Assembly (NCBI GenBank): GCA_976226885.1 | Contig: OZ320322.1 | Span: 27,218,001 to 27,282,000, forward strand | Reading direction: 5' to 3' | DNA length: 64,000 bases | Source: Iphione sp. A-MEVVRFRX5 | Taxonomy: Eukaryota | Shown: positions 36,697 through 60,700 of the stretch, one piece after another | How positions within the stretch are numbered: position 1 is the first letter of the stretch | Layout of the letters: the number at the start of each line of letters is the position of its first letter | The notes under the pieces: model-generated | Told to the model about the DNA's origin: nothing | What the model saw: the letters and a program-made list of their open reading frames with translations, nothing else | Database searches by the model: none | Program-made: the position numbers and the translations under genes

Positions 36697-36735
<39 letters not shown>

Positions 36736-39700
36736 GCAGTATACCCCAATGGAGGGAGCAACTCAGCAGCAGGTGAGCGACTCAACTGATCTTCCAGGGG
36801 CAGTACAGCCTCCCGCCTCCCAGGCCCCCTGCATGACGAGCTCTGACATTGAGAGAGTAGAGGGCACGGGCCCAGTCAGTAAAGAGTCTCTGCCTCAAGA
36901 GGCCATTGCGGGGCAGACTTATAGCAGGGGAACGGAATACGGTGATAAATTGGAAATGGAATCATCAGCGGTTCCACCAGGGGAAGGGTTGGCACAAACA
37001 GCGCAGGGCGGGGCGCGTAGTGAGGTGGTGTCTGCAATGACTGTTCAGACAGGTGTTCTTGTGCCGCCTCCCAGCAAAATGCTAAAACAGGGTGATGGAG
37101 GGGAACATATACCGGGACAAAAACGTTGGCCGCCTGATGGAGACGATACGGGCCAACACAAAACCACCGCGACGCCTCCGCCTCTTCATGAGCCTCAAAA
37201 ACCTGCCGTTGCCATGGCGATTGGAAGCATTCCCAGTGCACATCAACAGCCGCCCGGCGCGGCCGTTGCCATGGGCACTGTCCCGGCGAGTTATGATGAA
37301 CAAATGAGAACGTTTGTAGGGGAGGATGGAGACGCTTTTCAAAAGGTTAAGGTGTCTGGAACCGTTCCAGATCCGTTAGAAATGACTATTGTCCAGCCAA
37401 AAGCTGACGTTGTTCGCTCTCCTCCGACGCATGGTAAAGATGATGAATTTCAAGCGGACTCCCAAGAAGAGAGACGAAAGATGGAAGCAACTGGGGAGCT
37501 GTCCTCAGAAGGTGTTGGTATCAAAACAAGGCCTATGGCATCGCACCCTTCACCCAGCCAAGAGATGCCCCAGTCTGCTCAGATAGAACAGACATTACCC
37601 ACAAATATGCCACCGCCACCTCCCGTCCCTATGAGAGTTTCATCCAGAACGGCAGAGACAGAATCACCCATACCCCGACCAGCTAAAAGGCCCTCCTCGG
37701 AAGAAAACGTTAAAAGGGCGCCGAAAAGGCCAACAGGTCCACCGCCCCCAATACCTCCTAGAAAGCCGAAGGTCAAGATACAGGACGGAAAGGTCGTTAA
37801 GGTTGAAAGTTCAGATGAGGCTCACCCGCAGGAGACCCCGGTATGTAGCAGCGGAGTGGAGCAAGAGGCTGCTGCCGACGACGACGACGTATTCCTTCCC
37901 CAATCGGCTGTCATCATAGAAGGAAGGACAGGGGCTCGAGTGGAGAGGAAGGATTCGCTGGAGGGCAGCGGTAGTCCCAAATCCAAGTCGGGATTAGATA
38001 TCTGTTGGGTACCTACCGATGTACAGCCGCATGTGCGGCACCCGTCCGACCTTGACAACGTCATCGAGTCCCCAGAGGAAGAAGAGGTCTTGTCTCGGGA
38101 GCACACTGTCACGGGAGCAGACGTTGTCGATGCTATCGAGAGAAAGATTGGCACCCAGAGTCCCACCACAGCGCAGATCATGACGAACGTGCTGGGGGCG
38201 GCCGGAGCGGAGCAATTACTAGGCCTCTCTGTCATCCCGGAGGTCGAGTCAGAGGACGAGGCCAAACTCGGTCGTAAAGCCAAAGGCGTGGGGACTGGCC
38301 TGGATCATCCTAGTGGTGTTGAAAAGCCTCAAGATAAGCCGATCACGGAGGCCGAGCCGAGCACTGCCGAGACGAAGTCGGCGCCGCAGGACGTCCCCGC
38401 ACCTGAGATGACTTCTAGCCTCGTGAGATCGGAAGGAGCGGCTTCCGACGACTTCGAGGTGGAGATCACCGGCGCCATCGAGGAGATGGCTCCTTTGCTG
38501 TCATCGGAGGACGACGGGGACGTCCTGGACGGCATGGACGACGAGCCCTACGTGGAAATCCCGGAGACCCCTGCAACCGGGGAGCAGGCCACTCGGCGGC
38601 AGTTCAGTCGCATCTGGGAGCTGCAGGGCCAGCCCAGCAGGGACTATGATGAAAGCAGCGCCTGTGTGGTCGACGAGCCGTCGTCACCGCTCGAGGCGGC
38701 TGCTAGCGAGGGCGTCAGGTACCACAGGCGGGAAAAGCTGCAGCTGTCAGGGCCAGGGCTACAGGAGGTAGCAATGGATGCAGCTGACAGTCTCTCCGCC
38801 GAACAGGCTGCCAGGGAGACTGCCTTGTATGAGGAAGCCATGGAAGTAGGCGACACGATCGGTGCTGATGCTCTACCCCCACCCAGACGGGAGGAGTCGC
38901 CTGAAGACGTGAAGAAGAAACCAGAAGAGATGGACATCGACTTGTCCACTGAGATGGGGAGAATGCAGGAGAAATTAACGGAGGAGCTTCAGTACACCAC
39001 CAACGAGAACAGGGATACCATGGAAGCTGAACCAATTGGCTACGACCAACCTGCACGGGACATGAAAGAACCGGACGATCGGTATACATTAGATGCAAAG
39101 TTAGAACAGGAGCTAAGGTCAGCGTCAGAAGAGTTGATCTACCAAACGAACAACGGGGTTGGTCCTCCTCACCCTCGTCCTCCTCAACGGGAGGATACTC
39201 AGGACATGAAGACGCAGGTGGTGGAGATAGAGGAGCAACATGAGGTGGAGAACGTGCACATAGAATACGTGCACTACACACCGGTAAAGAGCACACAGGT
39301 GCCACCAGCAGAACCAGCGAATGTCCTCGAACCTGAGAGTGCTCAAGGGGTACAACAGACGGGCCCTGATATTCCAGTGATACGCCATGACGAAGTATTG
39401 GACGACTCTACGAGAGAATATGTCCCTGCGTACGGAGATATGAATTTCTCTTATTTTTATGATGTATTAGCTGAGGATATGAGAATAAAAGCGGAAATTC
39501 TTTCCAAAAGCCGCGAACAGCTGCATTTTGTGGAGAGATCGGTGTATGAGTTAGATGACGAGGATTTGCCTTCCGAGCATCTCCTGTATCCGAAATCCAC
39601 GATGAAAGTCTCCAAAAGCGAAGAGGTTTTACTGGACATTGATGAAGAGGAAGACGTCAGAGGAAAAGACAGGCCAAAGGCAGACTCTACAAATGCGCTG

Positions 39701-42700
39701 AACTTGGAGTACACATTGTATAACATACCGCATTCGTTATCTGAGGATAACATCGTCTCACTTTGTAACACGGGATATAAAAGTGTGGAAGAACTCCGAC
39801 AGGAGATCGAAGACGAGAACCTGCCAGTGGAACGCCTGGAAATCGAGACGGGTACAATGAAGATTGCCAAAAGTGAAGAATTGCTCAATGTCAATGAAGA
39901 GGAAAAAGTTGAACATCTCATTTACGAACAATCTGTTATTCCGTACGAGGACTATGCCAGTAGCAGCGAGGATGCTGGTGCCGAGAAAATGGCTAAACCT
40001 GTTAAGCCAAAGATAGCAAAACCTGGTCGACTCACAAACGAAGAGAGGAGGAGAGAGCGAGTACTACGGAAGCTAGACGCCTACCGTCTGGCCCAACTTC
40101 GTCCCGTTCGATTCGTTCGAGGCGTTCCGGAAAGATTGACCGACAGTTTTTCTACCCTGGAAAAGAAGAAAAAGCCTAAGAAAAAAGAAGCTGACAACAG
40201 TACAACACCATTTCACGAGGTTGACCAACAAGTGCTGGAAAAGACTCCTCATCAGGAGATAGAACGGCTACCCGAGTATGGTAGGCCTTTACCTCTATCT
40301 ATTGACAGGCCCACAGCAGGGATGGAATTGAAGGACGAACCACATAAGATCATACAACAAGATCAGGCAGTACCTGAGCGGCCGACCTCCTTTGCCGCTC
40401 CGGCCAGGATCTCCGGGGTTCCTGACCCACGGTTCGTATCTGATACCCTGCAGCGGGAGAGCGATCTTAGAATAGAGCGGAGTCGATTAGAAGAAAGATC
40501 GAAGGAGTATTCACAATTACCAGAGGAGAGAATAATACAGCAGGAACAGGCAGTACCTGAACGGCCGACTTCCTACGCTGCCCCGACCAGGATCTCCGAG
40601 GTTCCTGACTCAAGGTTTATAACTGATAACCTGCAGCGAGATATTGACCTCAGAATAGAGCGGGATCAGCTAGAAGAAAAGCCAAAACTACCAGAGGAGA
40701 GAATAACTGTGGAAGATAAATTAGCTGCACCTAAACAAGATCAACTACAAAGGGAAAGAATAGTCCAGGGTGAAGTGGAGAGAATAGCATTAGATCGTGA
40801 GTTTGGGGTGATAGATAGGTCAAGGAGTGTTTCTCCACAGACAACATCAAAACCTAGTGATATGGACACATTCGAAGAAGCACTTCCCGGTGATACGGAG
40901 GAGGATTGGTCTGAAGTAATCGAGTCGGTAATCGACAGTCTTGAAGAAGACACACTGGATACCCATCTCAGGAAGCCTGTAGACAAAAAGGGCACACTAG
41001 TTGATCAATCTGACATGCTAGAAATAATTTCTGCTACTCCAGTATCACCAGATGATTACAGTATAAAGGGAGACACAGAACTATCAAAAGGTATCGAGGA
41101 AAGACCAGTAAGTTCACTGCAAAGACGAGAAGATGAAAGGACAATAGAAACAACGGCTGTTGGGGACATGATGGACGTGGACCTTGAGTTATCGAAACAG
41201 ATTGGACCAGTACAGGACTCCCTAGATGTACGCTTCAAAGAAAGGGGAGAAGACCAGGTATACGAGGCGAAATTCAAGGAAGAATCCTTATTACTGTCGA
41301 GAAGGGACGAAGAGCTTCCCATGAAACCAGTAGAGGCGGACCAAAAACCACCGTCCGATGTCATTCAGTCGCAGCCCGAACTGTATCAGGCCGGTTTTAA
41401 AACAGAGACATTAGCAGGTGACACACCAACGGGTGGGTTTTTACAGCTAGGAGGGCTTCACACACCACCAGCAGTCGACAGGCTCGAACAAGTCGGGGAC
41501 ACTGAAAAAGATCAGAGGGTAGAGGAAACAGACCGTCCCGCTGGGGAGGGTGACAATATGATTTCTAGTGTACCAGAAGCTACACTGATAGGGAGGACAA
41601 CAGAAGAAGGAATGTTGCTACAACCATCTAGGCTGGAACAGTATGTTGAAGATCCACTGGAGAGGTCGGGCATCATTTCTCCCAGACCCCATTCAATGGT
41701 AGTTGACGAGTATGTTGTAGACAGTCCTATCGTACCGGTGCTGGAATTGAAGGTGACACAGCAAGATCAGGCCATAGATGAACGACAGCCAGCGCCATTT
41801 GCTTTTGTAATGGAGGAGGAAAGCGCAGGGGAAGCAGACGTACTCGAGATTGAGCCTTCAACTGAACATCTTCAAACTGATGTTGAAAAATATCAGCCCG
41901 TACAAATTGTCCAGGAACAAAAGTCATTCGACGACGAGGAAGACGTCTTGATTAAGGAAGTTTTAGACGAGCAACAGTCAAAATTATCAGACGAAACGAA
42001 AGGGGAGGAGATAATTATCACTGAGGTACAGCCGCAAGATATTGACACGACACCCGACGGAGAAATACAAGTGACACGACCGGAGCTGTCCACGATGCAA
42101 CAGGAGCTTGGTGTTCCGATGGAGAAATCCGAGTTGATTTCTCCCCGGCCAGTGTCTTTGAATGTGGAAGAATCGGTGATAACATACCCGATCTCTGCAG
42201 GGAGTGACCTACAGATAAGCCAGGCTGATCAGTCCGCCCTTGAACAAAAATCATCTCCCATGGTATTAATGGAAGGAGAAACTATGAAATGGCCAGAGGC
42301 TTACACGGTACACCCATCTCTGGATGTACCAAAAAGGGACTTAGGTGCAGCTGAGGAAATCATTCAGACTAATAAAGTTCAGTTATCATCGCCAAAACAA
42401 TTTGCTCTGGAGCAAGATATTACCACTACAGTTGAAAGGCCAGCCACCATTCCCGGCAGACCCCCTTCAATGAATGTTGATATTCATATAGACAAAGACG
42501 TTTCTCAGGGAAAGGAAGATGTTATTGAAGGCAAGACATCGCTAGAGCAACTGGACAGTACAGCCGAATCAGATCGTATGATTCCTCACATTCCAATGGA
42601 AGACAAAAATGTTCCATTTCCTGAAACAGTGGCACTCTCTGCTGATAGTCAGACTGACGATATTCAAATACCTAAACCAGACCAACTCACTATACCAAAT

Positions 42701-45700
42701 CAGGAGGTAGTAATAGTACACCAACCTGATCAGTCTGTTTTGGCTCAAGAAGTGACACCAATCCAAACAACACAGGAAGAAATTATTAAAGAACCAGAGA
42801 CCATTCAAGTACAGCCATCAGTCGATACACTCGAGAAAGATGTTTTGAAGTATCAGCCTGAACAGATTACAGAAGAATTAGTTCCTGAGAAAGAGGATAT
42901 CCCAACTGAAAAAGTGGAGGACATTCCTTCTCCTGGTTTAAGCCAAGTTGATGTCAAGAAGGATGAGCATGTCTTAGATGTTGATCAATCTGAGCTGGTA
43001 ATAGAAAAAGTCTTTGAGACAGAAAAAGTGGAAATCAGTTGGCCTGAACAATCTGCTCTACAACAAGAGATGAGAGCCACAATTGAGAAATCAGAGATGA
43101 TTGCTCCACAGCCTTCACCTCTTCATCTCGATGAATCTATCATTCAACCTCCTGCTCCACAAGATAAAGATATCAAGATTAGCCAACCTGATCAGTCTGT
43201 TATGGCACAAGACGTGACACCCATCGCAACAACACAGGGAGAAATCATTCAAGAGCCAGAGACTACTGAAATACAGCCATCAGTAGATACTCTTGAGAGA
43301 GATGTTTTGAAATATCAGCCAGAACAAATTGCACAAGAAGTAATCCCTGAGAAAGAGGAAGCTGTTAGTGAAAGGTTGGAAGATATACTTCAGCCTGATT
43401 CAACAAAGGTTGATGTTACTGAAGAGGAGCTGCCACCAGTTTTAGAGGATAAGGAATTGCTCATAGCAAAACAAGCTGAACCTCAGAAGGTGGAGATCAG
43501 TTCACCTGAACAATCTGCACTTCCACAGGAGATGGGAGACACTATTGGGAAATCAGAAATGATTGCTCCACAACCTACATCTATTCATCTGGATGAATCA
43601 ATTGTTGAACCTACTCTTCCACAAGATAAAGATGTCAAGATCAGTCAACCTGATCAGTCTGTTGTGGCTCAAGAAGTGACACCAATCCAAACAACACAGG
43701 AAGAAATTATTAAAGAACCAGAGACCATTCAAGTACAGCCATCAGTCGATACACTCGAGAAAGATGTTTTGAAGTATCAGCCTGAACAGATTACAGAAGA
43801 ATTAGTTCCTGAGAAAGAGGATATCCCAACTGAAAAAGTGGAGGACATTCCTTCTCCTGGTTTAAGCCAAGTTGATGTCAAGAAGGATGAGCATGTCTTA
43901 GATGTTGATCAATCTGAGCTGGTAATAGAAAAAGTCTTTGAGACAGAAAAAGTGGAAATCAGTTGGCCTGAACAATCTGCTCTACAACAAGAGATGAGAG
44001 CCACAATTGAGAAATCAGAGATGATTGCTCCACAGCCTTCACCTCTTCATCTCGATGAATCTATCATTCAACCTCCTGCTCCACAAGATAAAGATATCAA
44101 GATTAGCCAACCTGATCAGTCTGTTATGGCACAAGACATGACACCCATCGCAACAACACAGGGAGAAATCATTCAAGAGCCAGAGACTACGGAAATACAG
44201 CTATCAGTAGATACTCTTGAGAAAGATGTTTTGAAATATCAGCCAGAACAAATTGCACAAGAAGTAATCCCTGAGAAAGAGGAAGGTGTGAGTGAAAGGT
44301 TGGAAGATATACCTCAGCCTGATTCAACAAAGGTTGATGTTACTGAAGAGGAGCTGCCACCAGTTTTAGAGGATAAGGAATTGCTCATAGCAAAACAAGC
44401 TGAACCTCAGAAGGTGGAGATCAGTTCATCTGAACAATCTGCACTTCCACAGGAGATGGGAGACACTATTGGGAAATCAGAAATGATTGCTCCACAACCT
44501 ACATCTATTCATTTGGATGAATCAATTGTTGAACCTACTCTTCCACAAGATAAAGATGTCAAGATCAGTCAACCTGATCAGTCTGTTGTGGCTCAAGAAG
44601 TGACACCAATCCAAACAACACAGGAAGAAATTATTAAAGAACCAGAGACCATTCAAGTACAGCCATCAGTCGATACACTCGAGAAAGATGTTTTGAAGTA
44701 TCAGCCTGAACAGATTACAGAAGAATTAGTTCCTGAGAAAGAGGATATCCCAACTGAAAAAGCGGAGGACATTCCTTCTCCTGGTTTAAGCCAAGTTGAT
44801 GTCAAGAAGGATGAGCATGTCTTAGATGTTGATCAATCTGAGCTGGTAATAGAAAAAGTCTTTGAGACAGAAAAAGTGGAAATCAGTTGGCCTGAACAAT
44901 CTGCTCTACAACAAGAGATGAGAGCCACAATTGAGAAATCAGAGATGATTGCTCCACAGCCTTCACCTCTTCATCTCGATGAATCTATCATTCAACCTCC
45001 TGCTCCACAAGATAAAGATATCAAGATTAGCCAACCTGATCAGTCTGTTATGGCACAAGACGTGACACCCATCGCAACAACACAGGGAGAAATCATTCCA
45101 GAGCCAGAGACTACTGAAATACAGCCATCAGTAGGTACTCTTGAGAAAGATGTTTTGAAATATCAGCCAGAACAAATTGCACAAGAAGTAATCCCTGAGA
45201 AAGAGGAAGGTGTTAGTGAAAGGTTGAAAGATATACCTCAGCCTGATTCAACAAAGGTTGATGTTACTGAAGAGGAGCTGCCACCAGTTTTAGAGGATAA
45301 GGAATTGCTCATAGCAAAACAAGCTGAACCTCAGAAGGTGGAGATCAGTTCACCTGAACAATCTGCACTTCCACAGGAGATGGGAGACACTATTGGGAAA
45401 TCAGAAATGATTGCTCCACAACCTACATGTATTCATTTGGATGAATCAATTGTTGAACCTACTCTTCCACAAGATAAAGATGTCAAGATCAGTCAACCTG
45501 ATCAGTCTGTTGTGGCTCAAGAAGTGACACCAATCCAAACAACACAGGAAGAAATTATTAAAGAACCAGAGACCATTCAAGTACAGCCATCAGTCGATAC
45601 ACTCGAGAAAGATGTTTTGAAGTATCAGCCTGAACAGATTACAGAAGAATTAGTTCCTGAGAAAGAGGATATCCCAACTGAAAAAGTGGAGGACATTCCT

Positions 45701-48700
45701 TCTCCTGGTTTAAGCCAAGTTGATGTCAAGAAGGATGAGCATGTCTTAGATGTTGATCAATCTGAGCTGGTAATAGAAAAAGTCTTTGAGACAGAAAAAG
45801 TGGAAATCAGTTGGCCTGAACAATCTGCTCTACAACAAGAGATGAGAGCCACAATTGAGAAATCAGAGATGATTGCTCCACAGCCTTCACCTCTTCATCT
45901 CGATGAATCTATCATTCAACCTCCTGCTCCACAAGATAAAGATATCAAGATTAGCCAACCTGATCAGTCTGTTATGGCACAAGACGTGACACCCATCGCA
46001 ACAACACAGGGAGGAATCATTCAAGAGCCAAAGACTACTGAAATACAGCCATCAGTAGATACTCTTGAGAAAGATGTTTTGAAATATCAGCCAGAACAAA
46101 TTGCACAAGAAGTAATCCCTGAGAAAGAGGAAGGTGTTAGTGAAAGGTTGGAAGATATACCTCAGCCTGATTCAACAAAGGTTGATGTTACTGAAGAGGA
46201 GCTGCCACCAGTTTTAGAGGATAAGGAATTGCTCATAGCAAAACAAGCTGAACCTCAGAAGGTGGAGATCAGTTCACCTGAACAATCTGCACTTCCACAG
46301 GAGATGGGAAACACTATTGGGAAATCAGAAATGATTGCTCCACAACCTACATCTATTCATTTGGATGAATCAATTGTTGAACCTACTCTTCCACAAGATA
46401 AAGATGTCAAGATCAGTCAACCTGATCAGTCTGTTGTGGCTCAAGAAGTGACACCAATCCAAACAACACAGGAAGAAATTATTAAAGAACCAGAGACCAT
46501 TCAAGTACAGCCATCAGTCGATACACTCGAGAAAGATGTTTTGAAGTATCAGCCTGAACAGATTACAGAAGAATTAGTTCCTGAGAAAGAGGATATCCCA
46601 ACTGAAAAAGTGGAGGACATTCCTTCTCCTGGTTTAAGCCAAGTTGATGTCAAGAAGGATGAGCATGTCTTAGATGTTGATCAATCTGAGCTGGTAATAG
46701 AAAAAGTCTTTGAGACAGAAAAAGTGGAAATCAGTTGGCCTGAACAATCTGCTCTACAACAAGAGATGAGAGCCACAATTGAGAAATCAGAGATGATTGC
46801 TCCACAGCCTTCACCTCTTCATCTCGATGAATCTATCATTCAACCTCCTGCTCCACAAGATAAAGATATCAAGATTAGCCAACCTGATCAGTCTGTTATG
46901 GCACAAGACGTGACACCCATCGCAACAACACAGGGAGAAATCATTCAAGAGCCAGAGACTACTGAAATACAGCCATCAGTAGATACTCTTGAGAAAGATG
47001 TTTTGAAATATCAGCCAGAACAAATTGCACAAGAAGTAATCCCTGAGAAAGAGGAAGCTGTTAGTGAAAGGTTGGAAGATATACCTCAGCCTGATTCAAC
47101 AAAGGTTGATGTTACTGAAGAGGAGCTGCCACCAGTTTTAGAGGATAAGGAATTGCTCATAGCAAAACAAGCTGAACCTCAGAAGGTGGAGATCAGTTCA
47201 CCTGAACAATCTGCACTTCCACAGGAGATGGGAGACACTATTGGGAAATCAGAAATGATTGCTCCACAACCTACATGTATTCATCTGGATGAATCAATTG
47301 TTGAACCTACTCTTCCACAAGATAAAGATGTCAAGATCAGTCAACCTGATCAGTCTGTTGTGGCTCAAGAAGTGACACCAATCCAAACAACACAGGAAGA
47401 AATTATTAAAGAACTAGAGACCATTCAAGTACAGCCATCAGTCGATACACTCGAGAAAGATGTTTTGAAGTATCAGCCTGAACAGATTACAGAAGAATTA
47501 GTTCCTGAGAAAGAGGATATCCCAACTGAAAAAGTGGAGGACATTCCTTCTCCTGGTTTAAGCCAAGTTGATGTCAAGAAGGATGAGCATGTCTTAGATG
47601 TTGATCAATCTGAGCTGGTAATAGAAAAAGTCTTTGAGACAGAAAAAGTGGAAATCAGTTGGCCTGAACAATCTGCTCTACAACAAGAGATGAGAGCCAC
47701 AATTGAGAAATCAGAGATGATTGCTCCACAGCCTTCACCTCTTCATCTCGATGAATCTATCATTCAACCTCCTGCTCCACAAGATAAAGATATCAAGATT
47801 AGCCAACCTGATCAGTCTGTTATGGCACAAGACGTGACACCCATCGCAACAACACAGGGAGAAATCATTCAAGAGCCAAAGACTACTGAAATACAGCCAT
47901 CAGTAGATACTCTTGAGAAAGATGTTTTGAAATATCAGCCAGAACAAATTGCACAAGAAGTAATCCCTGAGAAAGAGGAAGGTGTTAGTGAAAGGTTGGA
48001 AGATATACCTCAGCCTGATTCAACAAAGGTTGATGTTACTGAAGAGGAGCTGCCACCAGTTTTAGAGGATAAGGAATTGCTCATAGCAAAACAAGCTGAA
48101 CCTCAGAAGGTGGAGATCAGTTCACCTGAACAATCTGCACTTCCACAGGAGATGGGAGACACTATTGGGAAATCAGAAATGATTGCTCCACAACCTACAT
48201 CTATTCATTTGGATGAATCAATTGTTGAACCTACTCTTCCACAAGATAAAGATGTCAAGATCAGTCAACCTGATCAGTCTGTTGTGGCTCAAGAAGTGAC
48301 ACCAATCCAAACAACACAGGAAGAAATTATTAAAGAACCAGAGACCATTCAAGTACAGCCATCAGTCGATACACTCGAGAAAGATGTTTTGAAGTATCAG
48401 CCTGAACAGATTACAGAAGAATTAGTTCCTGAGAAAGAGGATATCCCAACTGAAAAAGTGGAGGACATTCCTTCTCCTGGTTTAAGCCAAGTTGATGTCA
48501 AGAAGAATGAGCATGTCTTAGATGTTGATCAATCTGAGCTGGTAATAGAAAAAGTCTTTGAGACAGAAAAAGTGGAAATCAGATGGCCTGAACAATCTGC
48601 TCTACAACAAGAGATGAGAGCCACAATTGAGAAATCAGAGATGATTGCTCCACAGCCTTCACCTCTTCATCTCGATGAATCTATCATTCAACCTCCTGCT

Positions 48701-51700
48701 CCACAAGATAAAGATATCAAGATTAGCCAACCTGATCAGTCTGTTATGGCACAAGACGTGACACCCATCGCAACAACACAGGGAGAAATCATTCAAGAGC
48801 CAGAGACTACTGAAATACAGCCATCAGTAGATACTCTTGAGAAAGATGTTTTGAAATATCAGCCAGAACAAATTGCACAAGAAGTAATCCCTGAGAAAGA
48901 GGAAGGTGTTAGTGAAAGGTTGGAAGATATACCTCAGCCTGATTCAACAAAGGTTGATGTTACTGAAGAGGAGCTGCCACCAGTTTTAGAGGATAAGGAA
49001 TTGCTCATAGCAAAACAAGCTGAACCTCAGAAGGTGGAGATCAGTTCACCTGAACAATCTGCACTTCCACAGGAGATGGGAGACACTATTGGGAAATCAG
49101 AAATGATTGCTCCACAACCTACATCTATACATTTGGATGAATCAATTGTTGAACCTACTCTTCCACAAGATAAAGATGTCAAGATCAGTCAACCTGATCA
49201 GTCTGTTGTGGCTCAAGAAGTGACACCAATCCAAACAACACAGGAAGAAATTATTAAAGAACCAGAGACCATTCAAGTACAGCCATCAGTCGATACACTC
49301 GAGAAAGATGTTTTGAAGTATCAGCCTGAACAGATTACAGAAGAATTAGTTCCTGAGAAAGAGGATATCCCAACTGAAAAAGTGGAGGACATTCCTTCTC
49401 CTGGTTTAAGCCAAGTTGATGTCAAGAAGGATGAGCATGTCTTAGATGTTGATCAATCTGAGCTGGTAATAGAAAAAGTCTTTGAGACAGAAAAAGTGGA
49501 AATCAGTTGGCCTGAACAATCTGCTCTACAACAAGAGATGAGAGCCACAATTGAGAAATCAGAGATGATTGCTCCACAGCCTTCACCTCTTCATCTCGAT
49601 GAATCTATCATTCAACCTCCTGCTCCACAAGATAAAGATATCAAGATTAGCCAACCTGATCAGTCTGTTATGGCACAAGAAGTGACACCCATCGCAACAA
49701 CACAGGGAGAAATCATTCAAGAGCCAGAGACTACTGAAATACAGCCATCAGTAGATACTCTTGAGAAAGATGTTTTGAAATATCAGCCAGAACAAATTGC
49801 ACAAGAAGTAATCCCTGAGAAAGAGGAAGGTGTTAGTGAAAGGTTGGAAGATATACCTCAGCCTGATTCAACAAAGGTTGATGTTACTGAAGAGGAGCTG
49901 CCACCAGTTTTAGAGGATAAGGAATTGCTCATAGCAAAACAAGCTGAACCTCAGAAGGTGGAGATCAGTTCACCTGAACAATCTGCACTTCCACAGGAGA
50001 TGGGAGACACTATTGGGAAATCAGAAATGATTGCTCCACAACCTACATCTATTCATTTGGATGAATCAATTGTTGAACCTACTCTTCCACAAGATAAAGA
50101 TGTCAAGATCAGTCAACCTGATCAGTCTGTTGTGGCTCAAGAAGTGACACCAATCCAAACAACACAGGAAGAAATTATTAAAGAACCAGAGACCATTCAA
50201 GTACAGCCATCAGTCGATACACTCGAGAAAGATGTTTTGAAGTATCAGCCTGAACAGATTACAGAAGAATTAGTTCCTGAGAAAGAGGATATCCCAACTG
50301 AAAAAGTGGAGGACATTCCTTCTCCTGGTTTAAGCCAAGTTGATGTCAAGAAGAATGAGCATGTCTTAGATGTTGATCAATCTGAGCTGGTAATAGAAAA
50401 AGTCTTTGAGACAGAAAAAGTGGAAATCAGATGGCCTGAACAATCTGCTCTACAACAAGAGATGAGAGCCACAATTGAGAAATCAGAGATGATTGCTCCA
50501 CAGCCTTCACCTCTTCATCTCGATGAATCTATCATTCAACCTCCTGCTCCACAAGATAAAGATATCAAGATTAGCCAACCTGATCAGTCTGTTATGGCAC
50601 AAGACGTGACACCCATCGCAACAACACAGGGAGAAATCATTCAAGAGCCAGAGACTACTGAAATACAGCCATCAGTAGATACTCTTGAGAAAGATGTTTT
50701 GAAATATCAGCCAGAACAAATTGCACAAGAAGTAATCCCTGAGAAAGAGGAAGGTGTTAGTGAAAGGTTGGAAGATATACCTCAGCCTGATTCAACAAAG
50801 GTTGATGTTACTGAAGAGGAGCTGCCACCAGTTTTAGAGGATAAGGAATTGCTCATAGCAAAACAAGCTGAACCTCAGAAGGTGGAGATCAGTTCACCTG
50901 AACAATCTGCACTTCCACAGGAGATGGGAGACACTATTGGGAAATCAGAAATGATTGCTCCACAACCTACATCTATACATTTGGATGAATCAATTGTTGA
51001 ACCTACTCTTCCACAAGATAAAGATGTCAAGATCAGTCAACCTGATCAGTCTGTTGTGGCTCAAGAAGTGACACCAATCCAAACAACACAGGAAGAAATT
51101 ATTAAAGAACCAGAGACCATTCAAGTACAGCCATCAGTCGATACACTCAAGAAAGATGTTTTGAAGTATCAGCCTGAACAGATTACAGAAGAATTAGTTC
51201 CTGAGAAAGAGGATATCCCAACTGAAAAAGTGGAGGACATTCCTTCTCCTGGTTTAAGCCAAGTTGATGTCAAGAAGGATGAGCATGTCTTAGATGTTGA
51301 TCAATCTGAGCTGGTAATAGAAAAAGTCTTTGAGACAGAAAAAGTGGAAATCAGTTGGCCTGAACAATCTGCTCTACAACAAGAGATGAGAGCCACAATT
51401 GAGAAATCAGAGATGATTGCTCCACAGCCTTCACCTCTTCATCTCGATGAATCTATCATTCAACCTCCTGCTCCACAAGATAAAGATATCAAGATTAGCC
51501 AACCTGATCAGTCTGTTATGGCACAAGAAGTGACACCCATCGCAACAACACAGGGAGAAATCATTCAAGAGCCAGAGACTACTGAAATACAGCCATCAGT
51601 AGATACTCTTGAGAAAGATGTTTTGAAATATCAGCCAGAACAAATTGCACAAGAAGTAATCCCTGAGAAAGAGGAAGGTGTTAGTGAAAGGTTGGAAGAT

Positions 51701-54700
51701 ATACCTCAGCCTGATTCAACAAAGGTTGATGTTACTGAAGAGGAGCTGCCACCAGTTTTAGAGGATAAGGAATTGCTCATAGCAAAACAAGCTGAACCTC
51801 AGAAGGTGGAGATCAGTTCACCTGAACAATCTGCACTTCCACAGGAGATGGGAGACACTATTGGGAAATCAGAAATGATTGCTCCACAACCTACATCTAT
51901 TCATTTGGATGAATCAATTGTTGAACCTACTCTTCCACAAGATAAAGATGTCAAGATCAGTCAACCTGATCAGTCTGTTGTGGCTCAAGAAGTGACACCA
52001 ATCCAAACAACACAGGAAGAAATTATTAAAGAACCAGAGACCATTCAAGTACAGCCATCAGTCGATACACTCGAGAAAGATGTTTTGAAGTATCAGCCTG
52101 AACAGATTACAGAAGAATTAGTTCCTGAGAAAGAGGATATCCCAACTGAAAAAGTGGAGGACATTCCTTCTCCTGGTTTAAGCCAAGTTGATGTCAAGAA
52201 GGATGAGCATGTCTTAGATGTTGATCAATCTGAGCTGGTAATAGAAAAAGTCTTTGAGACAGAAAAAGTGGAAATCAGTTGGCCTGAACAATCTGCTCTA
52301 CAGCAAGAGATGAGAGCCACAATTGAGAAATCAGAGATGATTGCTCCACAGCCTTCACCTCTTCATCTCGATGAATCTATCATTCAACCTCCTGCTCCAC
52401 AAGATAAAGATATCAAGATTAGCCAACCTGATCAGTCTGTTATGGCACAAGAAGTGACACCCATCGCAACAACACAGGGAGAAATCATTCAAGAGCCAGA
52501 GACTACTGAAATACAGCCATCAGTAGATACTCTTGAGAAAGATGTTTTGAAATATCAGCCAGAACAAATTGCACAAGAAGTAATCCCTGAGAAAGAGGAA
52601 GGTGTTAGTGAAAGGTTGGAAGATATACCTCAGCCTGATTCAACAAAGGTTGATGTTACTGAAGAGGAGCTGCCACCAGTTTTAGAGGATAAGGAATTGC
52701 TCATAGCAAAACAAGCTGAACTTCAGAAGGTGGAGATCAGTTCACCTGAACAATCTGCACTTCCACAGGAGATGGGAGACACTATTGGGAAATCAGAAAT
52801 GATTGCTCCACAACCTACATGTATTCATCTGGATGAATCAATAGTTGAACCTACACTTCCACAAGATAAAGATGTCAAGATCAGTCAACCTGATCAGTCT
52901 GTTGTGGCTCAAGACATGACACCAATCCAAACAATGCAGGAAGATTTTATCAAAGAGCCAATGAGCACTGAAATGCATGCATCCGTTGATACCCTTGAAA
53001 AGGATGATTTGAAGTCTCAACCTGACCCAATTACAAGAGAATTCGATTTTGAGAAGGACGAAATCCCAGCAATAAAGGACAAGTTGCCAATGAAGACAAC
53101 AGAAGAAGAAATTGTGAAAGAAGCACCTATTGTCAAAATGGAAACTGAAACTAAAGTAACGTCTGTTGAGCCTAGACAGGTTGGTGATGGTTTTCCTCTT
53201 AAGAGTGACAAATCACAGATGGGAATATTAGATGGTCCTATACATAAAAGTCACGATCGAAAGGAGGAAGGCATAGTCCTTCTTGAACAACCCCCTGCAG
53301 TGAGAGATGAAATCATTCAAGGGGAAAAAATTGAAATTATTCGGAGTGAGGAGGTTATCACATCACCAGAATTTGGGACTACCATCGAAATGTCTGGCCC
53401 GATTCTCTCACCGCCAGAAGCAATTTGTCCTCCTCCCTTAGATATGGGTACTACCTGTGAAGCTGTACGTGAAGACGATATGCTCCAGAAGCAAGACAGC
53501 ACTGATATGGAAGCAGCAACCGACAATGTGCAACCTGATCTTGAGCAAATTCCACATCAGACTGTAGAGGAACTGGCTTTTGTCAAACCTTCGTCTCCAG
53601 CAGAGAAGGTAAAACAAGAGGAAATGCCACTGAAGAAAACCCTGAAACCTCTTCAGGACGAGCACACGGCGATGGTTTTAACAGCCCCACCTGAAAGTCC
53701 TGTATGGGTTACAGCTTTTGAGGAACTAGAGGTGCAAACTGAGTTGGCAACAGCAGATGTCAATGTAGAAGACTCAGTGCAAATGGAGACCATCATAATG
53801 CCGCACCAGATGGAACAGACAGTCAATATTCAATGTATGCGCTTGGAGGATCAGCTGGAAACATCTGAAGCAAAATCTGACATAGATGCAGTAGAAGAAG
53901 TGGAAGCAGCTATGGCAGAAGAGGAAGCGGTTCCTTTAAGTAACGCGATGAGCAAGGACAGAGTGGAACAATCCGTTCGAGAGATGCATCTTGATACTCA
54001 CCTTGAAAGGCCTGCAAGTGAACATTCAAGCATTGGGTTCGACGAGGAGGGAGCAAAACTACTCATTTCTGATGATGCTGTGATTGATGTTGCCACGAAA
54101 CATCCACCAGCGGTGCAGTCTGTATCAGAAATCCGTGTAAGCGATCACTATTGCATCACGGAGCAAGATAGAGAGGAGGTTATTTTGATTTTGGAGGAAT
54201 TAAATGCTAATCTAAGTACAGAGAGGGAGAGGGAATTGGATAAGGCATTGCGCAAATCTCCAATACAACAAACAACAATGGAATCCACACTGACTGAAGA
54301 AGAATCCATACAGATGACTGTTACTGAACAGATTCCGAGTGAACAACTCGTGGCACTGGAAACAACGTCAATGCAAGAGGATGAAGCAGTGTTGAAGGAA
54401 AGTGTGAGAAATCTATCATTGGCCGGTATGTCACTTACTGGATCACTGCCGTTAGAAACACCATCGAAGAAAATCGACCGAATCGAACAGTCTGTCAGAG
54501 AACAAGAAGTACACGTGACCCCAGAAGCAACTCCCTCTAATGAGTTTACAGCGGATCAATTCGTTGCAATCGAGGCAAGTATAGATCCAGTCGTTCAGGA
54601 CCACACTTTCTCGGATGAACACAAAGTCGGGGAGGCCAAACTTGATGCAACAGTAATCGAGTCTCATCAGACCGAGGTGGTCAGAAGCACAAGGAGAATC

Positions 54701-57700
54701 GAACAGTCGGTTATTGAGCAGGAATTAAATAACTTTGCAGTGAGCAGCCAAGATGTAAGTGAAGGCTCAGCTTTCCAGGAGTTTGTTGCTATGGAATCCC
54801 ATGTCAAATCTGAAAGCGGCGATGAAGCAGTCAAACAAGAAAAGGCAACTAGCGAGGGCCTCGTCGGCCTTTCTGTTACGTCGAAATCGAATACAGGAGG
54901 TAAGGTTGAAAAGAAAGCAAGGCCTGCTCAGGTCGTCACTGAGCAGACACTTGAGGAGATATTTGCTCTCAGGCCATCCATCAGTGACGAATCTTTGTTG
55001 AAAGAGTTCGTAGCGCAGGTATCGGTGACGGAGGAGGAAGGCCATCTTATCGAACAGGAACAAAGCGGGACGACAACCGACGAAGCGGAGGAGTCGCTGG
55101 TATCAGGAGCAACAGCCAGCGTTGTGAGCCAGCATTCTTCAATGGTCGAGCAACTCACCACGGAACAGTCACTACAAGGATACTTCAAGGAGGAAGAGTC
55201 ACTCCCACTGGAGACTCAGGCGGAGGAGCTGGAGAGCAAGCAGTACTCACCTGACACCAACTACATCAAGCGTATGATCATCCGGGCGATCGAGTTCACC
55301 GACGACCCGCACATGCAGAAACGGTACGAGACCTTCCTCAAGCAGACACCGACCAAACCGGTGAGCCGGAGGAAGTCCCGTAAACAGACGGAGGACGGCT
55401 ACCGGGTGAAGGTGGTGGAAGCCAAGCGGCCATCCGGCGATCTCCTGGAGTTGGACGTCAAGATAGAAACCCCCCCGGAGGAGGTCATTTTCCTGCCGTA
55501 CAAGAAGACCGAGGACATCAGACATGAGATTGCGCGGCCCTTGTCTGCCGTGGAGAGTCTACCCGACGACACTGGCAGTAGCAGCATAGAACCCTCGGAG
55601 CTGATCATGGAGGAATTCCGCTCGCAGAGTCCGCCGACGGACAGCTCCCAGCACAAAATGGAGGCCGTGGCCGTGGGTGATATGGGGGTTCCCGTGGGAA
55701 AGGTCGAGAGCGATCCTGATGAGCAGCTCTTCCTGCCGTACAAGTCGCTTGAAAATCGTCTGTCACAAGTGGCGCTAGACAGCGTCACCGATGGCCTCAC
55801 CACACCGACCATGACCAGCGACTTGGCCAAGTCACCCAGTCTTGTTCGTCCCGGCGTAGAGGCAGAAACGGACGAGGCTGTCGAAGCCGAGGGTTCGTTG
55901 TCCCTCTCAACAGGGTCCTATCAGGTGGACACCCTCGAGACCACATCGGCCGAATTCCGCGGGGATTCCCGAACGGAGAGTGCGTCGAACGTTGCCCCGG
56001 GCGAGCGTTTAATCCCAGGGTTGAACGTGGTGGAGGCGCCGTCATCCGATACAACGGAGGAAGCGGAAGTGATCGACACGTACCGAATGGCCTTCCAGGT
56101 GCATGACCACTGGTGTCCCATCGACGCCGACGCGACGGGGACCCTGTCGTCTCGATCGGAGGGGCAGCTCACCCAGAGTCCGGTCTACAGCGACGAGCGC
56201 TTCCCCCGCTACGGGCCTCCTTCGGAGAAGGACGATATCGACGTGAGTGACATCTCCTATGACATTGACGCCGATAACATATCCACCGACGAGCTGCAGC
56301 TGTCAGAGGTCGCCACAGATGACACCGAGCCGTCGTCGCCTCAGCTACGCCACCTGGTGAAGAGCAACACCTTCAAGGACCAGCCGAGGAAGAAGGCGCG
56401 TTCAGAGGCCCAGACCAGCCCCGGTAAGGAGACGGCGGCTGGGAGCGAGAAGCGCACGGGGACGGGGATGAAGACGAAGCGAATGCGACGTTTCATTGAG
56501 CGATGGGAGAAAGAGAGCGACCACAGCTCCACTTCCGACTCGCTCGACCCCCCGCGCGTGCCCAGTGCGGACGACGACGACGACGAATTCTACGATGACT
56601 CGACCCCATGGCCGTCGGATCCCCTCGGCTTTGGCGGCAAGTCGCTCATCGACCGGCACCTGGAAATGCTGAAGGCGGACGTGCAGCGGGAGACAACGCC
56701 AGAGGTGGAACTGCTCACCGAGGACCAGATGATGGAGGTGCTTAGGCAGGAAAATTATATGGGTAGCTCCAGTATCTCCACGGAAACCCTGGAGAGGAAC
56801 CTGCAGGAGCACCAGACGGACGATAGTTTGGGGGCTGAGTTGAAAACCACAGAAATAATTGGCAGGACATGGGAGCGTTCTATACCTCAGCATCCAGTAC
56901 CGGTTAAGATGGATCTCAGTTCATCGGGGACAGAATGTGAGGCATTCTCTAAGGTATCTCCTACAGTGGTTCTCACAGAAGAAATCCCTCCGCCTGAATC
57001 TTCAGCTGCACAGGCGCCACCTACTAGTACTATTGTAAAGCCAGATGCGGGAAGAGAAATAACGACGCGCTCCCTGGTGGAGCAAGGGGGAACATCGCGC
57101 AAGGAATCCATCGATGTGGAGGTAATGGAAGTCCTTGGCCGTGAGGCGCGTACTGAAACGAGTGGAATTCAACGCCATATATTTGAACCGCGGCAATTTG
57201 AATTCCACCATATTGAGAGTTCGCATATGTCATCATTTAAGACTGCAACCTCAGGCCAGATCGTTCGGCCGTTTGAGTGTTTCGGTCCGCCCGGCAACCT
57301 GCTCGTGGCTCAGCGTTCGGACCTGAGGCCCCTGGTGCAAGTGAGGCGTGACGGGCAGCTCACCGTCGACCGGCTCTATTACGGTTCACCGAGCACTGAG
57401 CGCACTGAGTCCTTCCTGGCGATGCCCTTCTCCCTGCCCGCACTGATAATACAAACCCCGAGGCCCCCACGCCCCAGTCACCCTCCCCCTGATGACGGTC
57501 CAGACCGTCCAGCGCAGCCTGGTCCTGACTGGCGGGACCCGCATGCCGACCGGGGCGGCGGCGGCGGCAGGGGTGGTGACAAAGGAGCACAAGTGGCAGG
57601 AAGGACAGGAGAGATCAGCAGTACTGGTGGTGGCTCATCAGTCTCGTATTCGTATTGTGATGCGGCGGGGGTGAGGTGCGGCCAAGGTGACGTGAGTGAA

Positions 57701-60700
57701 TGTACGCCCGGCCGCGGGGGGTATGCGACCGCCGAGCCCTACGGTCCTGGGAATGGACTGATGCGGCAAGAGAAATCCGAACCCCGGCCCTTCGCGTCTG
57801 CGCATTCCTCAGAAGGGACAGAGGTCACCATGGAAACCCTATCTAGGCCAGGGTCAAGGACGCCAGAGAGGGAGTACTCCGGAGGAAAGGACCAGCCACG
57901 CCGCAGACTGGAGGAGACTGTAGAATCATTACGTGTGGTGGAGGAGAGGAGGAGAAACGAGAAGGGGAAAGGGACGGCAGGATGTAGTGGCAACACTTCT
58001 ACGGATCACAACAAAGGCAACCAAACTGGTCACTCGTCAGGTACTGGCATACCCGCCGATAAGGGCATATCATCTTCGCCGAGTACTCACAGAGAGCAGT
58101 CGCTATTGGCGGGTGGCACGGCAGTCGGTTCATATTATGGCGGTTGTTATGGTAACAACCTGGAAGGAGACCGCCCTAGAAACCCTGGGTGTACTTTGGG
58201 TGTGGCCCTGCCCGGAGGCAGTGCGCAGGTAAACGTGTTACATACACAGTCGGCTACAGGTAAGCCAAAAACAGGAGGCGTGCGGGCCAACACCATGGAG
58301 AAACCGAAGCTGGGGGATCGGCTGGCCGGCCCCGAAGGCGGGAAGGACGAACGGAAGGAGCAGGGCCGAGGAGGAGGGAGGACACCGCTCCAGTATATGC
58401 ACCGTGACAGTCTGTGGAGCGAGGAGGAGGAGGAGCCGCCCGCCGGGCCATCCTCCGTACCACACTCATCCCAGCACCGACAGCAGGGCACGACAGCCAC
58501 CTCCTTCCCACAGGGCAACCAAGGTTACGAACGCCCGAACGTCTACGCCAGTACGCAGGGTAATCGGCCGCGCCTGGAGATAGATTACCCCATACCGCTG
58601 CCGACAGCGGAGGATCAGATTAATCCCCGTGATCCCGAACGTAGACACGGCCCAGAGACTGATAAGTCGCCAGACTCGCCCCAGCCCACTGTGAAATCCG
58701 ACAGCAGGCAGCTGGGGCCGAACGCCGCTGATGAAACCAATAACTTGCCCCTCGAGGGGCCTTATCGGCGTCAATACGAGTACATCGAGACATCGAGCGA
58801 GGAGGGGGACGAGGAAGATGTCATCCTCTATGATGTAAACGACATTGATGAAGAGCTGGAGGATGCTACTGAGATATGTGAGGCTCCTGTGGAAGACAGG
58901 GAGGATCCCAACAGCGGCGATGTAAGTGCCGACAGAGGGAAGGATCGAGGGACAGGAGGTGAGAGTGAGCATGAGGTGTCATTATATAGGACTGCTGTAA
59001 CAGGCTCCGAGCCACGCTATCAGCAGGAAGCCGCGGCGCCTGGAACACCTCCAGCATCTGACCAGGAGCTCTCCCAGGAGGCCTGGGCTGAACTACAGGA
59101 GGACTGCAGGCAGATAGTGTTGCCATGGCTACAATGTGACGAAGCAGGCATTTCTGCCTCATTCCATGCCAATGACCAAGACCATCGACACTGGCAGGAA
59201 GATGAACCGAAGATGGCAGAGAAGCAACAACCGCAGCAGATGGCAGAAGAGCCTAGAAGTGGCCGGCCGAATGGTGCAGATGTAAAGCACTCCACAGGGG
59301 ACCACCGCCCACAACGACCGCGGGCTGATAGTTCGAAAAGCAGACGAAAGATAGCGAAGGGCGCCTCCCAGCATTTATTTACCACTGAAGAGTCGTGCTT
59401 CGAGCCAGGTGCAGGCGCATCGCAAAGGTCACGTCTTCCAGCTCAACTCAGCAGCAGCAGCGACTCTGCAGGCCAGATGTGGACCGCAGCCGCGGAAGAT
59501 GCGTTCTCAATGTCTACAAAATCCCAAACAACCGTATCATTATCGGACGCGTCTCAAATATCAGGGATCAAGGGGAGGAGCCGGAACGACCGGGACAGCC
59601 ACATAGAGAGGCGACGTGCCACAGATAAGCTAGAAATGACGAACGTGTTTGGCAATGATGGGGAAATTCTTGGCCAAGTCAGCGAAGGAATACAATATGA
59701 GAGGGGGACAGATGGTGAGGGAGAAGCCTTTCTTAAAAGGCTTCCATTTCCACACAGCTCATCCGAGACAACTCATTTTCAGTTTTACGAGGAGCAGTTG
59801 ACTAGCAGAGAGCAGTTCCAAGAGAAAGTTACCGAACTATGCGAGGAAACGATGATGATCACGAAAGAATCTTCAGAACTTCATAAAACGGTCGATTATG
59901 ATCAGGTAGCGTTAAGTAGTCATGAAAGTAGCAGAATGGAAGTCCAAAAGACGCTCCACGAAGAAAAAACAACAGAGGCTATGTCAGTTTCCACCGATAA
60001 ACAGTCATTTACTACTGGGTTTACACAGAGTTCGTCCACGTCGAGCCGAGTGGAACTGACAAGTGGAACGAAACTGGCGGGCGGCGAACTACACAATTTA
60101 GGTTCTAGTGTTGATTTGCAGAAAACTGTACAGACAGACTCAGTTCAGAGGGTCTCGTCGCACAAAGACAGCCATGCTGTTGTTGAGGGGTTTGAAGACT
60201 TTGCTGGGGAGATGACAGAAATCACTCCCCGCCGCCGTAAGCTTGGCAGTGATACTGACCTACGGATGCGTATTGATAACGTTAAAGGGGCAGAGGCTTC
60301 GCTATCTGCCGACCGCCCCGTCCACCCGCCACCGTCCACAGGCGACTCCGCGCCGCTCGCCACACTCGACGACGACCTGGCCAGCTCCAGCGCCGCCGAC
60401 GATAGCGACGCCTGTGGACAGAAATCCAAGACGCCGCCAGGGAGCCAAGCCCTGGATGAGCGTGACGTCATTAAGACGTCCCATACCGCCAACAGTAGAA
60501 GGTACGCCGGGCGTCAGGACGCCGCGCGCCGTGACGTCACTGACGTGTCGAGCACTCTAACATCCGGTGACGTCACGATGGACGGCGCTGACGTGCATTC
60601 CGTTGCTTCCGGTTTTGCTTCCCTCCCGCCCTCTAGTGGTTGCGATTCGGGAGCGTTTGGCATGCCCCCAGAGATGGCACATAACCCTGCTTCTTCCGCC

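What the first reader, a model, noticed from the sequence alone, without database searches (positions are those of the whole stretch)
42725..52888. Three-level higher-order repeat inside a coding exon (462 -> 924 -> 1848 bp)
Seen: two diverged but equal-length 154-aa monomers alternate strictly to form 11 nearly identical dimers. Shared variants give a further period of two dimers. B3 and B5 share the S->C variant (CIHLD) and B4 and B6 share E->K (EPKTT). A7 and A9 share KNEH and IRW, B7 and B9 share TCTATACAT, and B8, B10 and B11 share QEV. Inference: successive unequal crossing-over of the kind seen in satellite HORs, here tuning the length of a protein spacer in 308- or 616-aa steps.
Basis: seen in the sequence. 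Interest (0 to 1): 0.7.

Follow-up and report, generated by a model that had tools for sequence, protein, structure and literature searches.

The report
Two-level repeat array inside giant exon
The middle of a 26-kb protein-coding exon of an unnamed invertebrate gene is a young, perfectly in-frame array of 11 near-identical copies of a two-part 308-residue unit. It is a real but ordinary product of unequal crossing-over, and the claimed third repeat level is only one or two recent local duplications.

Summary
Window 42725-52888 is 22 gap-free 462-bp monomers. Two types, A and B, 75% alike in DNA and 66% in protein, alternate strictly and form 11 dimers that are 99.3% identical.

The third level (1848 bp) is not a true period. 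Identity at lag 1848 (99.43%) barely exceeds lag 924 (99.31%) and lag 2772 (99.34%). No site separates odd from even dimers. Two of the six shared-variant groups contain no pair of dimers two apart. What exists is one clear recent duplication of a two-dimer block (dimers 7-8 to 9-10, 1 difference in 1848 bp) and possibly an older one (3-4 to 5-6).

The array lies in a 26,133-bp first coding exon (34865-60997, 8,711 codons). The exon has a Kozak ATG and a consensus splice donor, and encodes an acidic protein (pI 4.4) predicted to be disordered. No Pfam domain, signal peptide, membrane segment, paralogue or detectable homologue was found.

Diverged older monomers flank the array, private variants pile up in the edge dimers, and four-gamete violations occur. 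These fit unequal crossing-over and gene conversion. A versus B gives dN/dS 0.29, so the sequence is coding and constrained.

The function (extensible spacer or multivalent scaffold) is inferred. Copy number could not be checked against reads. The scan noted this same exon separately as s1-334812.

The parts
34865..60997 (+). Giant first coding exon, 26,133 nt and 8,711 codons. The ATG sits in an ACCACCATG context with an in-frame stop 15 nt upstream. The exon ends at a consensus donor AAG|GTAAGA in phase 0.
   Evidence: The end was re-read from the sequence print: the last codon of KRLK is 60995-60997. The product is acidic (pI 4.4, about 963 kDa) and falls on the disordered side of the charge-hydropathy line. 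No Pfam family. No signal peptide or membrane segment.
41762..42724 (+). Two old, degenerate copies of the 154-residue monomer upstream of the young array, 33-36% protein identity to A.
   Evidence: Monomer HMM hits at aa 2310-2453 (iE 3.6e-15) and weaker pieces; alignment A1; search of the window's own genome.
42725..52888 (+). Young array of 11 AB dimers (22 x 462 bp, no indels) encoding 3,388 residues, about 379 kDa, pI 4.1.
48269..50116 (+). Dimers 7-8, the source or sister copy of the most recent two-dimer duplication.
   Evidence: Block 7-8 versus block 9-10 shows 1 difference in 1848 bp, against 8-20 for most other block pairs. The only other low pair is 6-7 versus 8-9 (3 differences), which overlaps the same duplicated stretch.
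50117..51964 (+). Dimers 9-10, the second copy of that duplication.
   Evidence: Dimer 7 = dimer 9 (0 differences, three shared private sites 238, 315 and 861). Dimers 8 and 10 differ at 1 site.
52889..53422 (+). Diverged A-like remnant monomer. The first 61 residues are clear and the rest is weak. It continues the A/B alternation past B11.
   Evidence: HMM hit at aa 6009-6069, iE 5.5e-21, and aa 6072-6186, iE 4e-4; alignment A1.
40364..40714 (+). A separate small duplication in the same exon: two copies of a roughly 61-residue unit (aa 1834-1950).
   Evidence: Repeated 6-mers spaced 61 residues apart; seen in the translation.

Best explanation
This is a real in-frame tandem array in the centre of the 26.1-kb first coding exon of an unnamed invertebrate gene. 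An old array of 154-residue repeats existed first, and its worn copies survive on both sides. One adjacent pair of already diverged monomers (A and B, synonymous divergence about 0.73) was then amplified as a 924-bp unit to 11 copies. The mechanism was unequal crossing-over and/or gene conversion in register with the dimer. The amplification is recent: the copies differ by about 0.7%. The centre-right of the array (dimers 5-10) is youngest. The last step was a duplication of a two-dimer block (7-8 to 9-10). These structural and evolutionary statements are shown by the sequence.

Function is inferred. The array encodes 3,388 acidic residues rich in Pro, Glu, Gln, Ile and Val, predicted to be unfolded. 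It most likely serves as an extensible spacer or multivalent scaffold segment of a giant intracellular protein. Crossing-over could change its length in steps of 308 residues or multiples of that.
For: Repeat anatomy.

Coding status: a single 8,725-aa ORF; 180 and 328 stops in the other two forward frames of the array; no indel in any of the 22 monomers; A versus B dN/dS 0.29, with differences falling 53, 36 and 25 at codon positions 3, 1 and 2.

Old flanking monomers.

Edge-old, centre-young gradient: private variants per dimer are 3,5,4,2,0,1,0,0,0,1,4, p=8.5e-5.

Recombination between copies: four-gamete violations at site pairs 489/857, 489/865, 638/857 and 857/865. Dimer 11 combines the 8/10-type 5' part with the 5-type 3' part.

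Two-dimer duplication: block distances.

Disorder: composition and charge-hydropathy; AlphaFold2 mean pLDDT 46.8 and pTM 0.13 for one dimer; no hydrophobic segment.

The array is unique in the genome.
Against: No reads could be laid, so copy number and the shared variants are unverified against raw data. No RNA evidence shows that the exon is expressed or spliced as modelled. Within-array variants are 20 nonsynonymous to 8 synonymous, not different from neutral (p=0.36), so selection on the young copies is not shown. Synonymous divergence between A and B is uneven along the monomer (0.43, 1.77, 0.69), so part of the A/B similarity may reflect past conversion rather than protein constraint. The structure predictions used single sequences, which is weak evidence for disorder. 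Function has no direct evidence, because no homologue or domain was found.
Confidence: 0.72

Rival explanations
1. One reading: a true three-level higher-order repeat in which a 1848-bp unit of two dimers is itself the amplified period of the array.
For: Mean differences are lowest at lag 2 (5.2 against 6.1-6.8 at lags 1 and 3-5; permutation p=0.007). Four of the six shared-variant groups include a pair of dimers two apart. B4 and B6 group together in the tree with 93/85 support.
Against: No site is fixed between odd and even dimers. Identity at lag 1848 exceeds lags 924 and 2772 by only about 0.1%. Shared variants 638 and 865 link dimers 1, 5 and 11. After collapsing linked sites, p=0.12. The signal comes almost wholly from dimers 7-10.
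Confidence: 0.15
2. Assembly or polishing artefact: the true array has fewer or more dimers, and the identical blocks 7-8 and 9-10 come from one extra pass through an assembly loop.
For: A 10-kb array at 99.3% identity is a classic place for copy-number error. Blocks 7-8 and 9-10 differ at a single base. No reads were available to check.
Against: All 22 monomers are exactly 462 bp and the 26-kb frame is unbroken, so base accuracy is high. Twenty-eight variant sites give most dimers a distinct signature. The genome has 89 contigs for 1.18 Gb, which suggests a long-read assembly (inferred), and such reads could span 10 kb. No second copy or haplotig of the locus exists in the assembly.
Confidence: 0.1
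3. The repeats are a multivalent binding platform rather than an inert spacer: each monomer carries conserved short motifs that dock a partner, so copy number sets valency.
For: A and B are 70-90% identical in two blocks (aa 1-56 and 99-154) but only 30-50% in the middle. Motifs around 'KYQP.QI' and 'EKSE.I.P.P' recur in the old upstream copy. dN/dS is 0.20-0.25 in the two blocks.
Against: Synonymous divergence is also lower in those blocks (0.43 and 0.69 against 1.77). dN/dS in the middle (0.30) is about the same. The block pattern may therefore reflect conversion history rather than motif selection. No partner or known motif class was identified.
Confidence: 0.3
4. The open frame is not a functional gene: either a decaying or never-translated sequence, or a satellite that happens to be open.
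For: No homologue in any search, no domain and no RNA data.
Against: An 8,725-codon open frame cannot arise by chance. The other two forward frames of the array hold 180 and 328 stops. dN/dS is 0.29. The exon has a Kozak ATG and a consensus donor. The array is unique in the genome.
Confidence: 0.03

Closest known systems
Alpha-satellite-type higher-order repeats (dimeric HORs)
   Same: Monomers are about 25% diverged within the unit and the units are more than 99% identical. The order is strictly head to tail, the array edges are older than the centre, and there are signs of exchange between copies.
   Different: This array is an in-frame coding sequence under purifying selection, present once in the genome, with only 11 units. 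No established third level exists.
NBPF/Olduvai triplets: three-monomer higher-order repeats inside human protein-coding genes (PMC9584774, PMC10475015)
   Same: A higher-order tandem unit is amplified recently inside a protein-coding gene, so copy number changes protein length.
   Different: Olduvai units are about 1.6-kb exon-plus-intron modules encoding a folded domain. Here the whole array lies in one exon and encodes a sequence predicted to be disordered. There is no sequence relation.
Titin PEVK, and the elastic segments of fly Sallimus and worm TTN-1 (PMC6469411 for PEVK; the fly and worm proteins are from my own knowledge)
   Same: A long, proline- and glutamate-rich, low-aromatic repetitive segment predicted to be unfolded, inside a giant intracellular protein. 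Repeat number evolves fast.
   Different: P+E+V+K is only about 42% here. There is no 26-28-residue PEVK period and no flanking Ig or Fn3 domains. PEVK is split over many small exons. The resemblance is in likely behaviour, not membership.
Repeat-length-variable structural genes with near-identical long coding repeats: filaggrin, spidroins, caddisfly H-fibroin (PMC13267644 for H-fibroin; the others are from my own knowledge)
   Same: Hundreds of residues per repeat at more than 95% identity within one giant exon, evolving in concert. Allelic copy-number variation is known in those genes.
   Different: Those are secreted or granule-forming proteins with known roles. This protein has no signal peptide and no known role, and allelic variation is untested.

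Membership tests
Higher-order repeat array (two-monomer HOR) | Monomers within a unit are clearly diverged while whole units are nearly identical | tested here: met
   74.9% identity at lag 462 against 99.31% at lag 924. The A and B clades each have 100% support.
Higher-order repeat array (two-monomer HOR) | Strict head-to-tail order of monomer types, without indels | tested here: met
   The identity matrix and HMM hits show 22 consecutive 154-residue units, ABAB....
Higher-order repeat array (two-monomer HOR) | Diverged monomeric copies at the array edges and a homogenised centre | tested here: met
   Old copies lie at 41762-42724 and 52889-53422. Sixteen of 20 private variants fall in dimers 1, 2, 3 and 11.
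Third-level HOR (1848-bp unit) | Diagnostic differences that separate odd from even dimers along the whole array | tested here: not met
   There are zero fixed odd/even sites. Lag-1848 identity is only 0.1% above lags 924 and 2772.
Third-level HOR (1848-bp unit) | Shared variants recur at a spacing of two dimers more often than chance | tested here: inconclusive
   p=0.007 for mean differences, p=0.055 for shared alleles, and p=0.12 after collapsing linked sites.
PEVK-type elastic segment of titin-like proteins | Composition dominated by P, E, V and K, with 26-28-residue motifs | tested here: not met
   P 10.6, E 15.5, V 8.7 and K 7.2 sum to about 42%. There is no sub-period: lags 154, 231 and 308 nt give about 25% identity.
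PEVK-type elastic segment of titin-like proteins | Flanking Ig or Fn3 domains in the same protein | tested here: not met
   No Pfam family at E<=0.1 in the 2,620 residues before the array or the 2,717 after it, nor at E<=0.01 in the downstream exons.
Calponin-homology linker (nesprin/spectraplakin), lead from note s1-335026 | A CH domain encoded just downstream of the exon end | tested here: not met
   A genome-wide six-frame search with PF00307 finds 34 matches. The nearest on this contig is 12 Mb away. The downstream exons have no Pfam hit.

The most novel reading that the evidence does not exclude
The exon belongs to a lineage-restricted gene of about 1 MDa with no detectable relatives. That holds even for the species that keep the neighbouring exon X3 at 45% identity. 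Its central 379-kDa segment would be a very young coding macrosatellite that is still expanding, now partly in two-dimer steps. Individuals would then carry protein alleles differing by about 34 or 69 kDa, giving a natural series for studying how the length of a disordered linker is tolerated or selected.
Probability: 0.2. Interest if true: 0.55.

Novelty: new member of a known kind. Interest (0 to 1): 0.33.

Why it matters
The locus shows satellite-style concerted evolution acting on translated sequence, and the steps can still be read. There is an old array, then amplification of one diverged monomer pair, then a block duplication. All of it stays in frame and all of it sits in a single exon. 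If copy number varies between individuals, the locus would offer a clean case of protein length changing in 308-residue steps. By itself it adds an example rather than a principle, because in-frame higher-order and near-identical long coding repeats are already documented in other genes. The more unusual fact is the host gene: an 8,711-codon first exon with no recognisable domain or relative.

Tried and rejected
Searches to name the gene:
- Pfam on both non-repeat parts and on one dimer found nothing.
- PDB sequence searches of both parts found nothing.
- The ESM Atlas gave only sub-threshold scores, 0.78 and 0.77 for 'Dendrin' on X3. I reject both as chance-level.
- The search for homologous proteins found nothing for the C-terminal part at full length or for two dimers.
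- An exhaustive HMMER search of aa 6794-7993 against 1.84 billion representatives gave 0 hits.
- An exact look-up showed that neither the ORF nor X3 is in the protein collection.

Other checks:
- The CH-domain lead (nesprin/spectraplakin) is rejected: there is no CH match near the locus.
- No paralogue or second copy exists in the genome.
- No sequencing run was listed, so read laying was never used.
- AlphaFold2 on aa 7230-7560, which looked the most foldable by eye, gave pLDDT 39.4, so no fold search was run.
- A sub-repeat inside the monomer (two segments beginning '..IS.P[DE]QS') is only weakly supported (z=3.4 and 2.2) and is left as a hint.
- The idea that the conserved blocks prove binding motifs was weakened, because synonymous divergence is low there too.

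- In several calls I set the exon end at 61003 instead of 60997. Those queries carried two extra residues, which does not affect any result.
- The spliced joining of the giant exon with X1-X3 was deliberately not done. Each exon was searched separately.
Full report

Yes for two levels. Tandem Repeats Finder reports a single array at 42721-53035 with period 462 and 22.3 copies. Ungapped self-comparison of 42725-52888 gives these identities:

| Lag (bp) | Identity |
|---|---|
| 154, 231, 308 | about 25% (random) |
| 462 | 74.9% |
| 924 | 99.31% |
| 1848 | 99.43% |
| 2772 | 99.34% |

- The 22x22 monomer matrix alternates between about 99-100% and about 75% without exception.
- All monomers are exactly 462 bp.
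- A maximum-likelihood tree puts the 11 A copies and the 11 B copies in two clades (100/99 and 100/100). Inside each clade the tree is star-like.
- Among the 11 dimers, 28 of 924 columns vary.

**2. The third level.**

- Eight of the variable sites are shared by two or more dimers, and they form six independent carrier groups:

| Sites | Dimers carrying the variant |
|---|---|
| 238, 315, 861 | 7, 9 |
| 489 | 8, 10, 11 |
| 535 | 4, 6 |
| 638 | 1, 5 |
| 857 | 3, 5, 11 |
| 865 | 1, 5, 11 |

- Four groups contain a pair of dimers two apart. Two groups do not.
- No column separates all odd from all even dimers. A real 1848-bp unit would require such columns.
- Permuting dimer order gives p=0.007 for mean differences at lag 2, p=0.055 for shared minor alleles, and p=0.12 once the three fully linked sites count as one event.
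- Block 7-8 against block 9-10 differs at 1 of 1848 positions. Most other block pairs differ at 8-20. Block 3-4 against 5-6 differs at 9.
- I read this as one clear recent duplication of two dimers and a possible older one. It is not a period of the array.

**3. What surrounds the array.**

- The array sits in one open frame, 34865-61042 (8,725 codons).
- The ATG at 34865 has the context ACCACCATG, with an in-frame stop 15 nt upstream. The frame meets a consensus donor, AAG|GTAAGA, after codon 8,711 at 60997, and a stop follows 15 codons later. So 34865-60997 is best read as a first coding exon of 26,133 nt ending in phase 0. This agrees with a separate first-reader note, s1-334812.
- The other two forward frames of the array hold 180 and 328 stops.
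- The exon product is about 963 kDa with pI 4.4. It has 12.9% Glu and 2.8% aromatic residues, and lies on the disordered side of the charge-hydropathy boundary in every part.
- It has no 19-residue window with Kyte-Doolittle hydropathy above 1.6 (maximum 1.24), so no membrane segment or signal peptide.
- AlphaFold2 without an alignment gives pLDDT 46.8 for one dimer and 39.4 for aa 7230-7560. This is weak evidence, but it is consistent with disorder.

**4. How the array arose.**

- An HMM of the monomers finds worn copies on both sides. Upstream, aa 2310-2453 scores iE 3.6e-15, with fragments nearby. Downstream, aa 6009-6069 scores iE 5.5e-21 and is A-like, so the A/B alternation continues past B11.
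- The young array was therefore amplified from one AB pair of an older array.
- A versus B gives dS 0.73, dN 0.215 and dN/dS 0.29, with differences mostly at third codon positions. Dimers differ by only about 0.7%. The amplification is thus roughly a hundred times younger than the A/B split.
- Private variants per dimer are 3,5,4,2,0,1,0,0,0,1,4. Sixteen of 20 fall in dimers 1, 2, 3 and 11 (p=8.5e-5). Old edges with a young centre are what arrays that exchange unequally are expected to show.
- Four pairs of shared sites show all four allele combinations. Dimer 11 looks like a mosaic of an 8/10-type and a 5-type B monomer. This needs exchange between copies or recurrent mutation.
- Within-array changes are 20 nonsynonymous to 8 synonymous, which cannot be told apart from neutrality (p=0.36).
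- Synonymous divergence between A and B is uneven along the monomer (0.43, 1.77, 0.69). Part of the block-wise A/B similarity may therefore be old conversion rather than motif selection.

**5. What gene is it?**

It remains unknown.

- Nothing was found in Pfam, PDB sequences, the Atlas, two word-indexed searches or an exhaustive HMMER pass over 1.84 billion representatives.
- The repeat and the non-repeat parts occur only at this locus in the 1.18-Gb, 89-contig genome.
- Notes by other agents call this genome an annelid. I did not test that.
- The suggestion that the exon end precedes a calponin-homology domain is not supported. The nearest CH match on this contig is 12 Mb away.
- Fifteen kb downstream on the same strand lie three more large open exons. 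X1 (L005:2085-2726) has a good acceptor and donor, both in phase 0, so it is compatible with the giant exon's phase-0 end. X2 runs from L005:3002 to about 4822. X3 (L017) has 1,856 codons and ends in a stop.
- These exons have no Pfam domain. A glycolate-oxidase-like (FMN_dh) gene follows them.
- X3 has unnamed orthologues in two other public assemblies, 45% identical over its full length.
- Whether X1-X3 belong to the same transcript as the giant exon is open.
- Relatives keep X3 at 45% identity, yet nothing matched the giant exon. It may evolve much faster or be lineage-restricted.

**6. Mechanism and function.**

- Shown: the array is in-frame and constrained, with a dimeric higher-order structure, old edges, exchange between copies and a recent two-dimer duplication.
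- Inferred: it evolves by unequal sister-chromatid or homologue exchange and conversion in 924-bp register.
- Inferred with less certainty: the 3,388-residue acidic segment acts as an extensible spacer or a multivalent scaffold in an intracellular giant protein. Its composition is reminiscent of PEVK-like springs, but it fails the composition, period and domain-context criteria for membership.

**7. Comparison and verdict.**

- Higher-order tandem units inside coding genes are documented for NBPF/Olduvai triplets (PMC9584774, PMC10475015).
- Near-identical long coding repeats with length alleles are known in silk and epidermal genes (PMC13267644, and my own knowledge).
- PEVK repeat turnover is described in PMC6469411.
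- This locus is a new member of that kind in an unnamed gene. The two-level structure is confirmed, the third level is not established, and the length-tuning idea is untested.

Noticed in passing
L005:2085-2726, L005:3002-4822, L017:1-5571 (G000:C22:27294085-27304424): Three further large disordered coding exons lie on the + strand 15-25 kb downstream. They are basic and rich in Ser, Arg and Gln. X1 has phase-0 borders compatible with the giant exon's donor. X3 (1,856 codons) ends in a stop and has 45%-identical unnamed orthologues (P0001-P0004) in other public assemblies. They may be the rest of the same gene.
   Followed up: partly
L003:7821-9998 (G000:C22:27309821 onward): Exons of an FMN-dependent dehydrogenase (glycolate or hydroxyacid oxidase-like, PF01070, E 2.8e-25) lie about 5 kb after X3 on the + strand. 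This is the next gene.
   Followed up: no
window 40364-40714: A separate tandem pair of a roughly 61-residue unit (aa 1834-1950, sharing 'QAVPERPTS' and 'DLRIER') in the N-terminal part of the same exon. A motif 'R[IV]EQSV' recurs three times at aa 6368-6616.
   Followed up: no
window 36560-36640 and 34990-35020: Long polyglutamine runs (about 14 Q and 7 Q) and polyproline tracts (PPPPPPP; PPPPIPPRKPK) in the N-terminal part of the exon. The polyproline tracts are possible SH3 or profilin-type ligands.
   Followed up: no
window 34001-42000 and 54001-60000 versus 42001-54000: The exon's two ends are GC-rich (0.52-0.59). The repeat region has the background GC (0.41-0.42). The whole exon shows a strong A-over-T skew (0.21-0.28) on the coding strand.
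   Followed up: no
window 42725-43186 (any monomer): There is weak internal similarity between the first ~40 residues of the monomer and residues ~105-145. Both begin '[VI].IS.P[DE]QS' (z=3.4 for A, 2.2 for B). This hints at an even older sub-repeat.
   Followed up: partly
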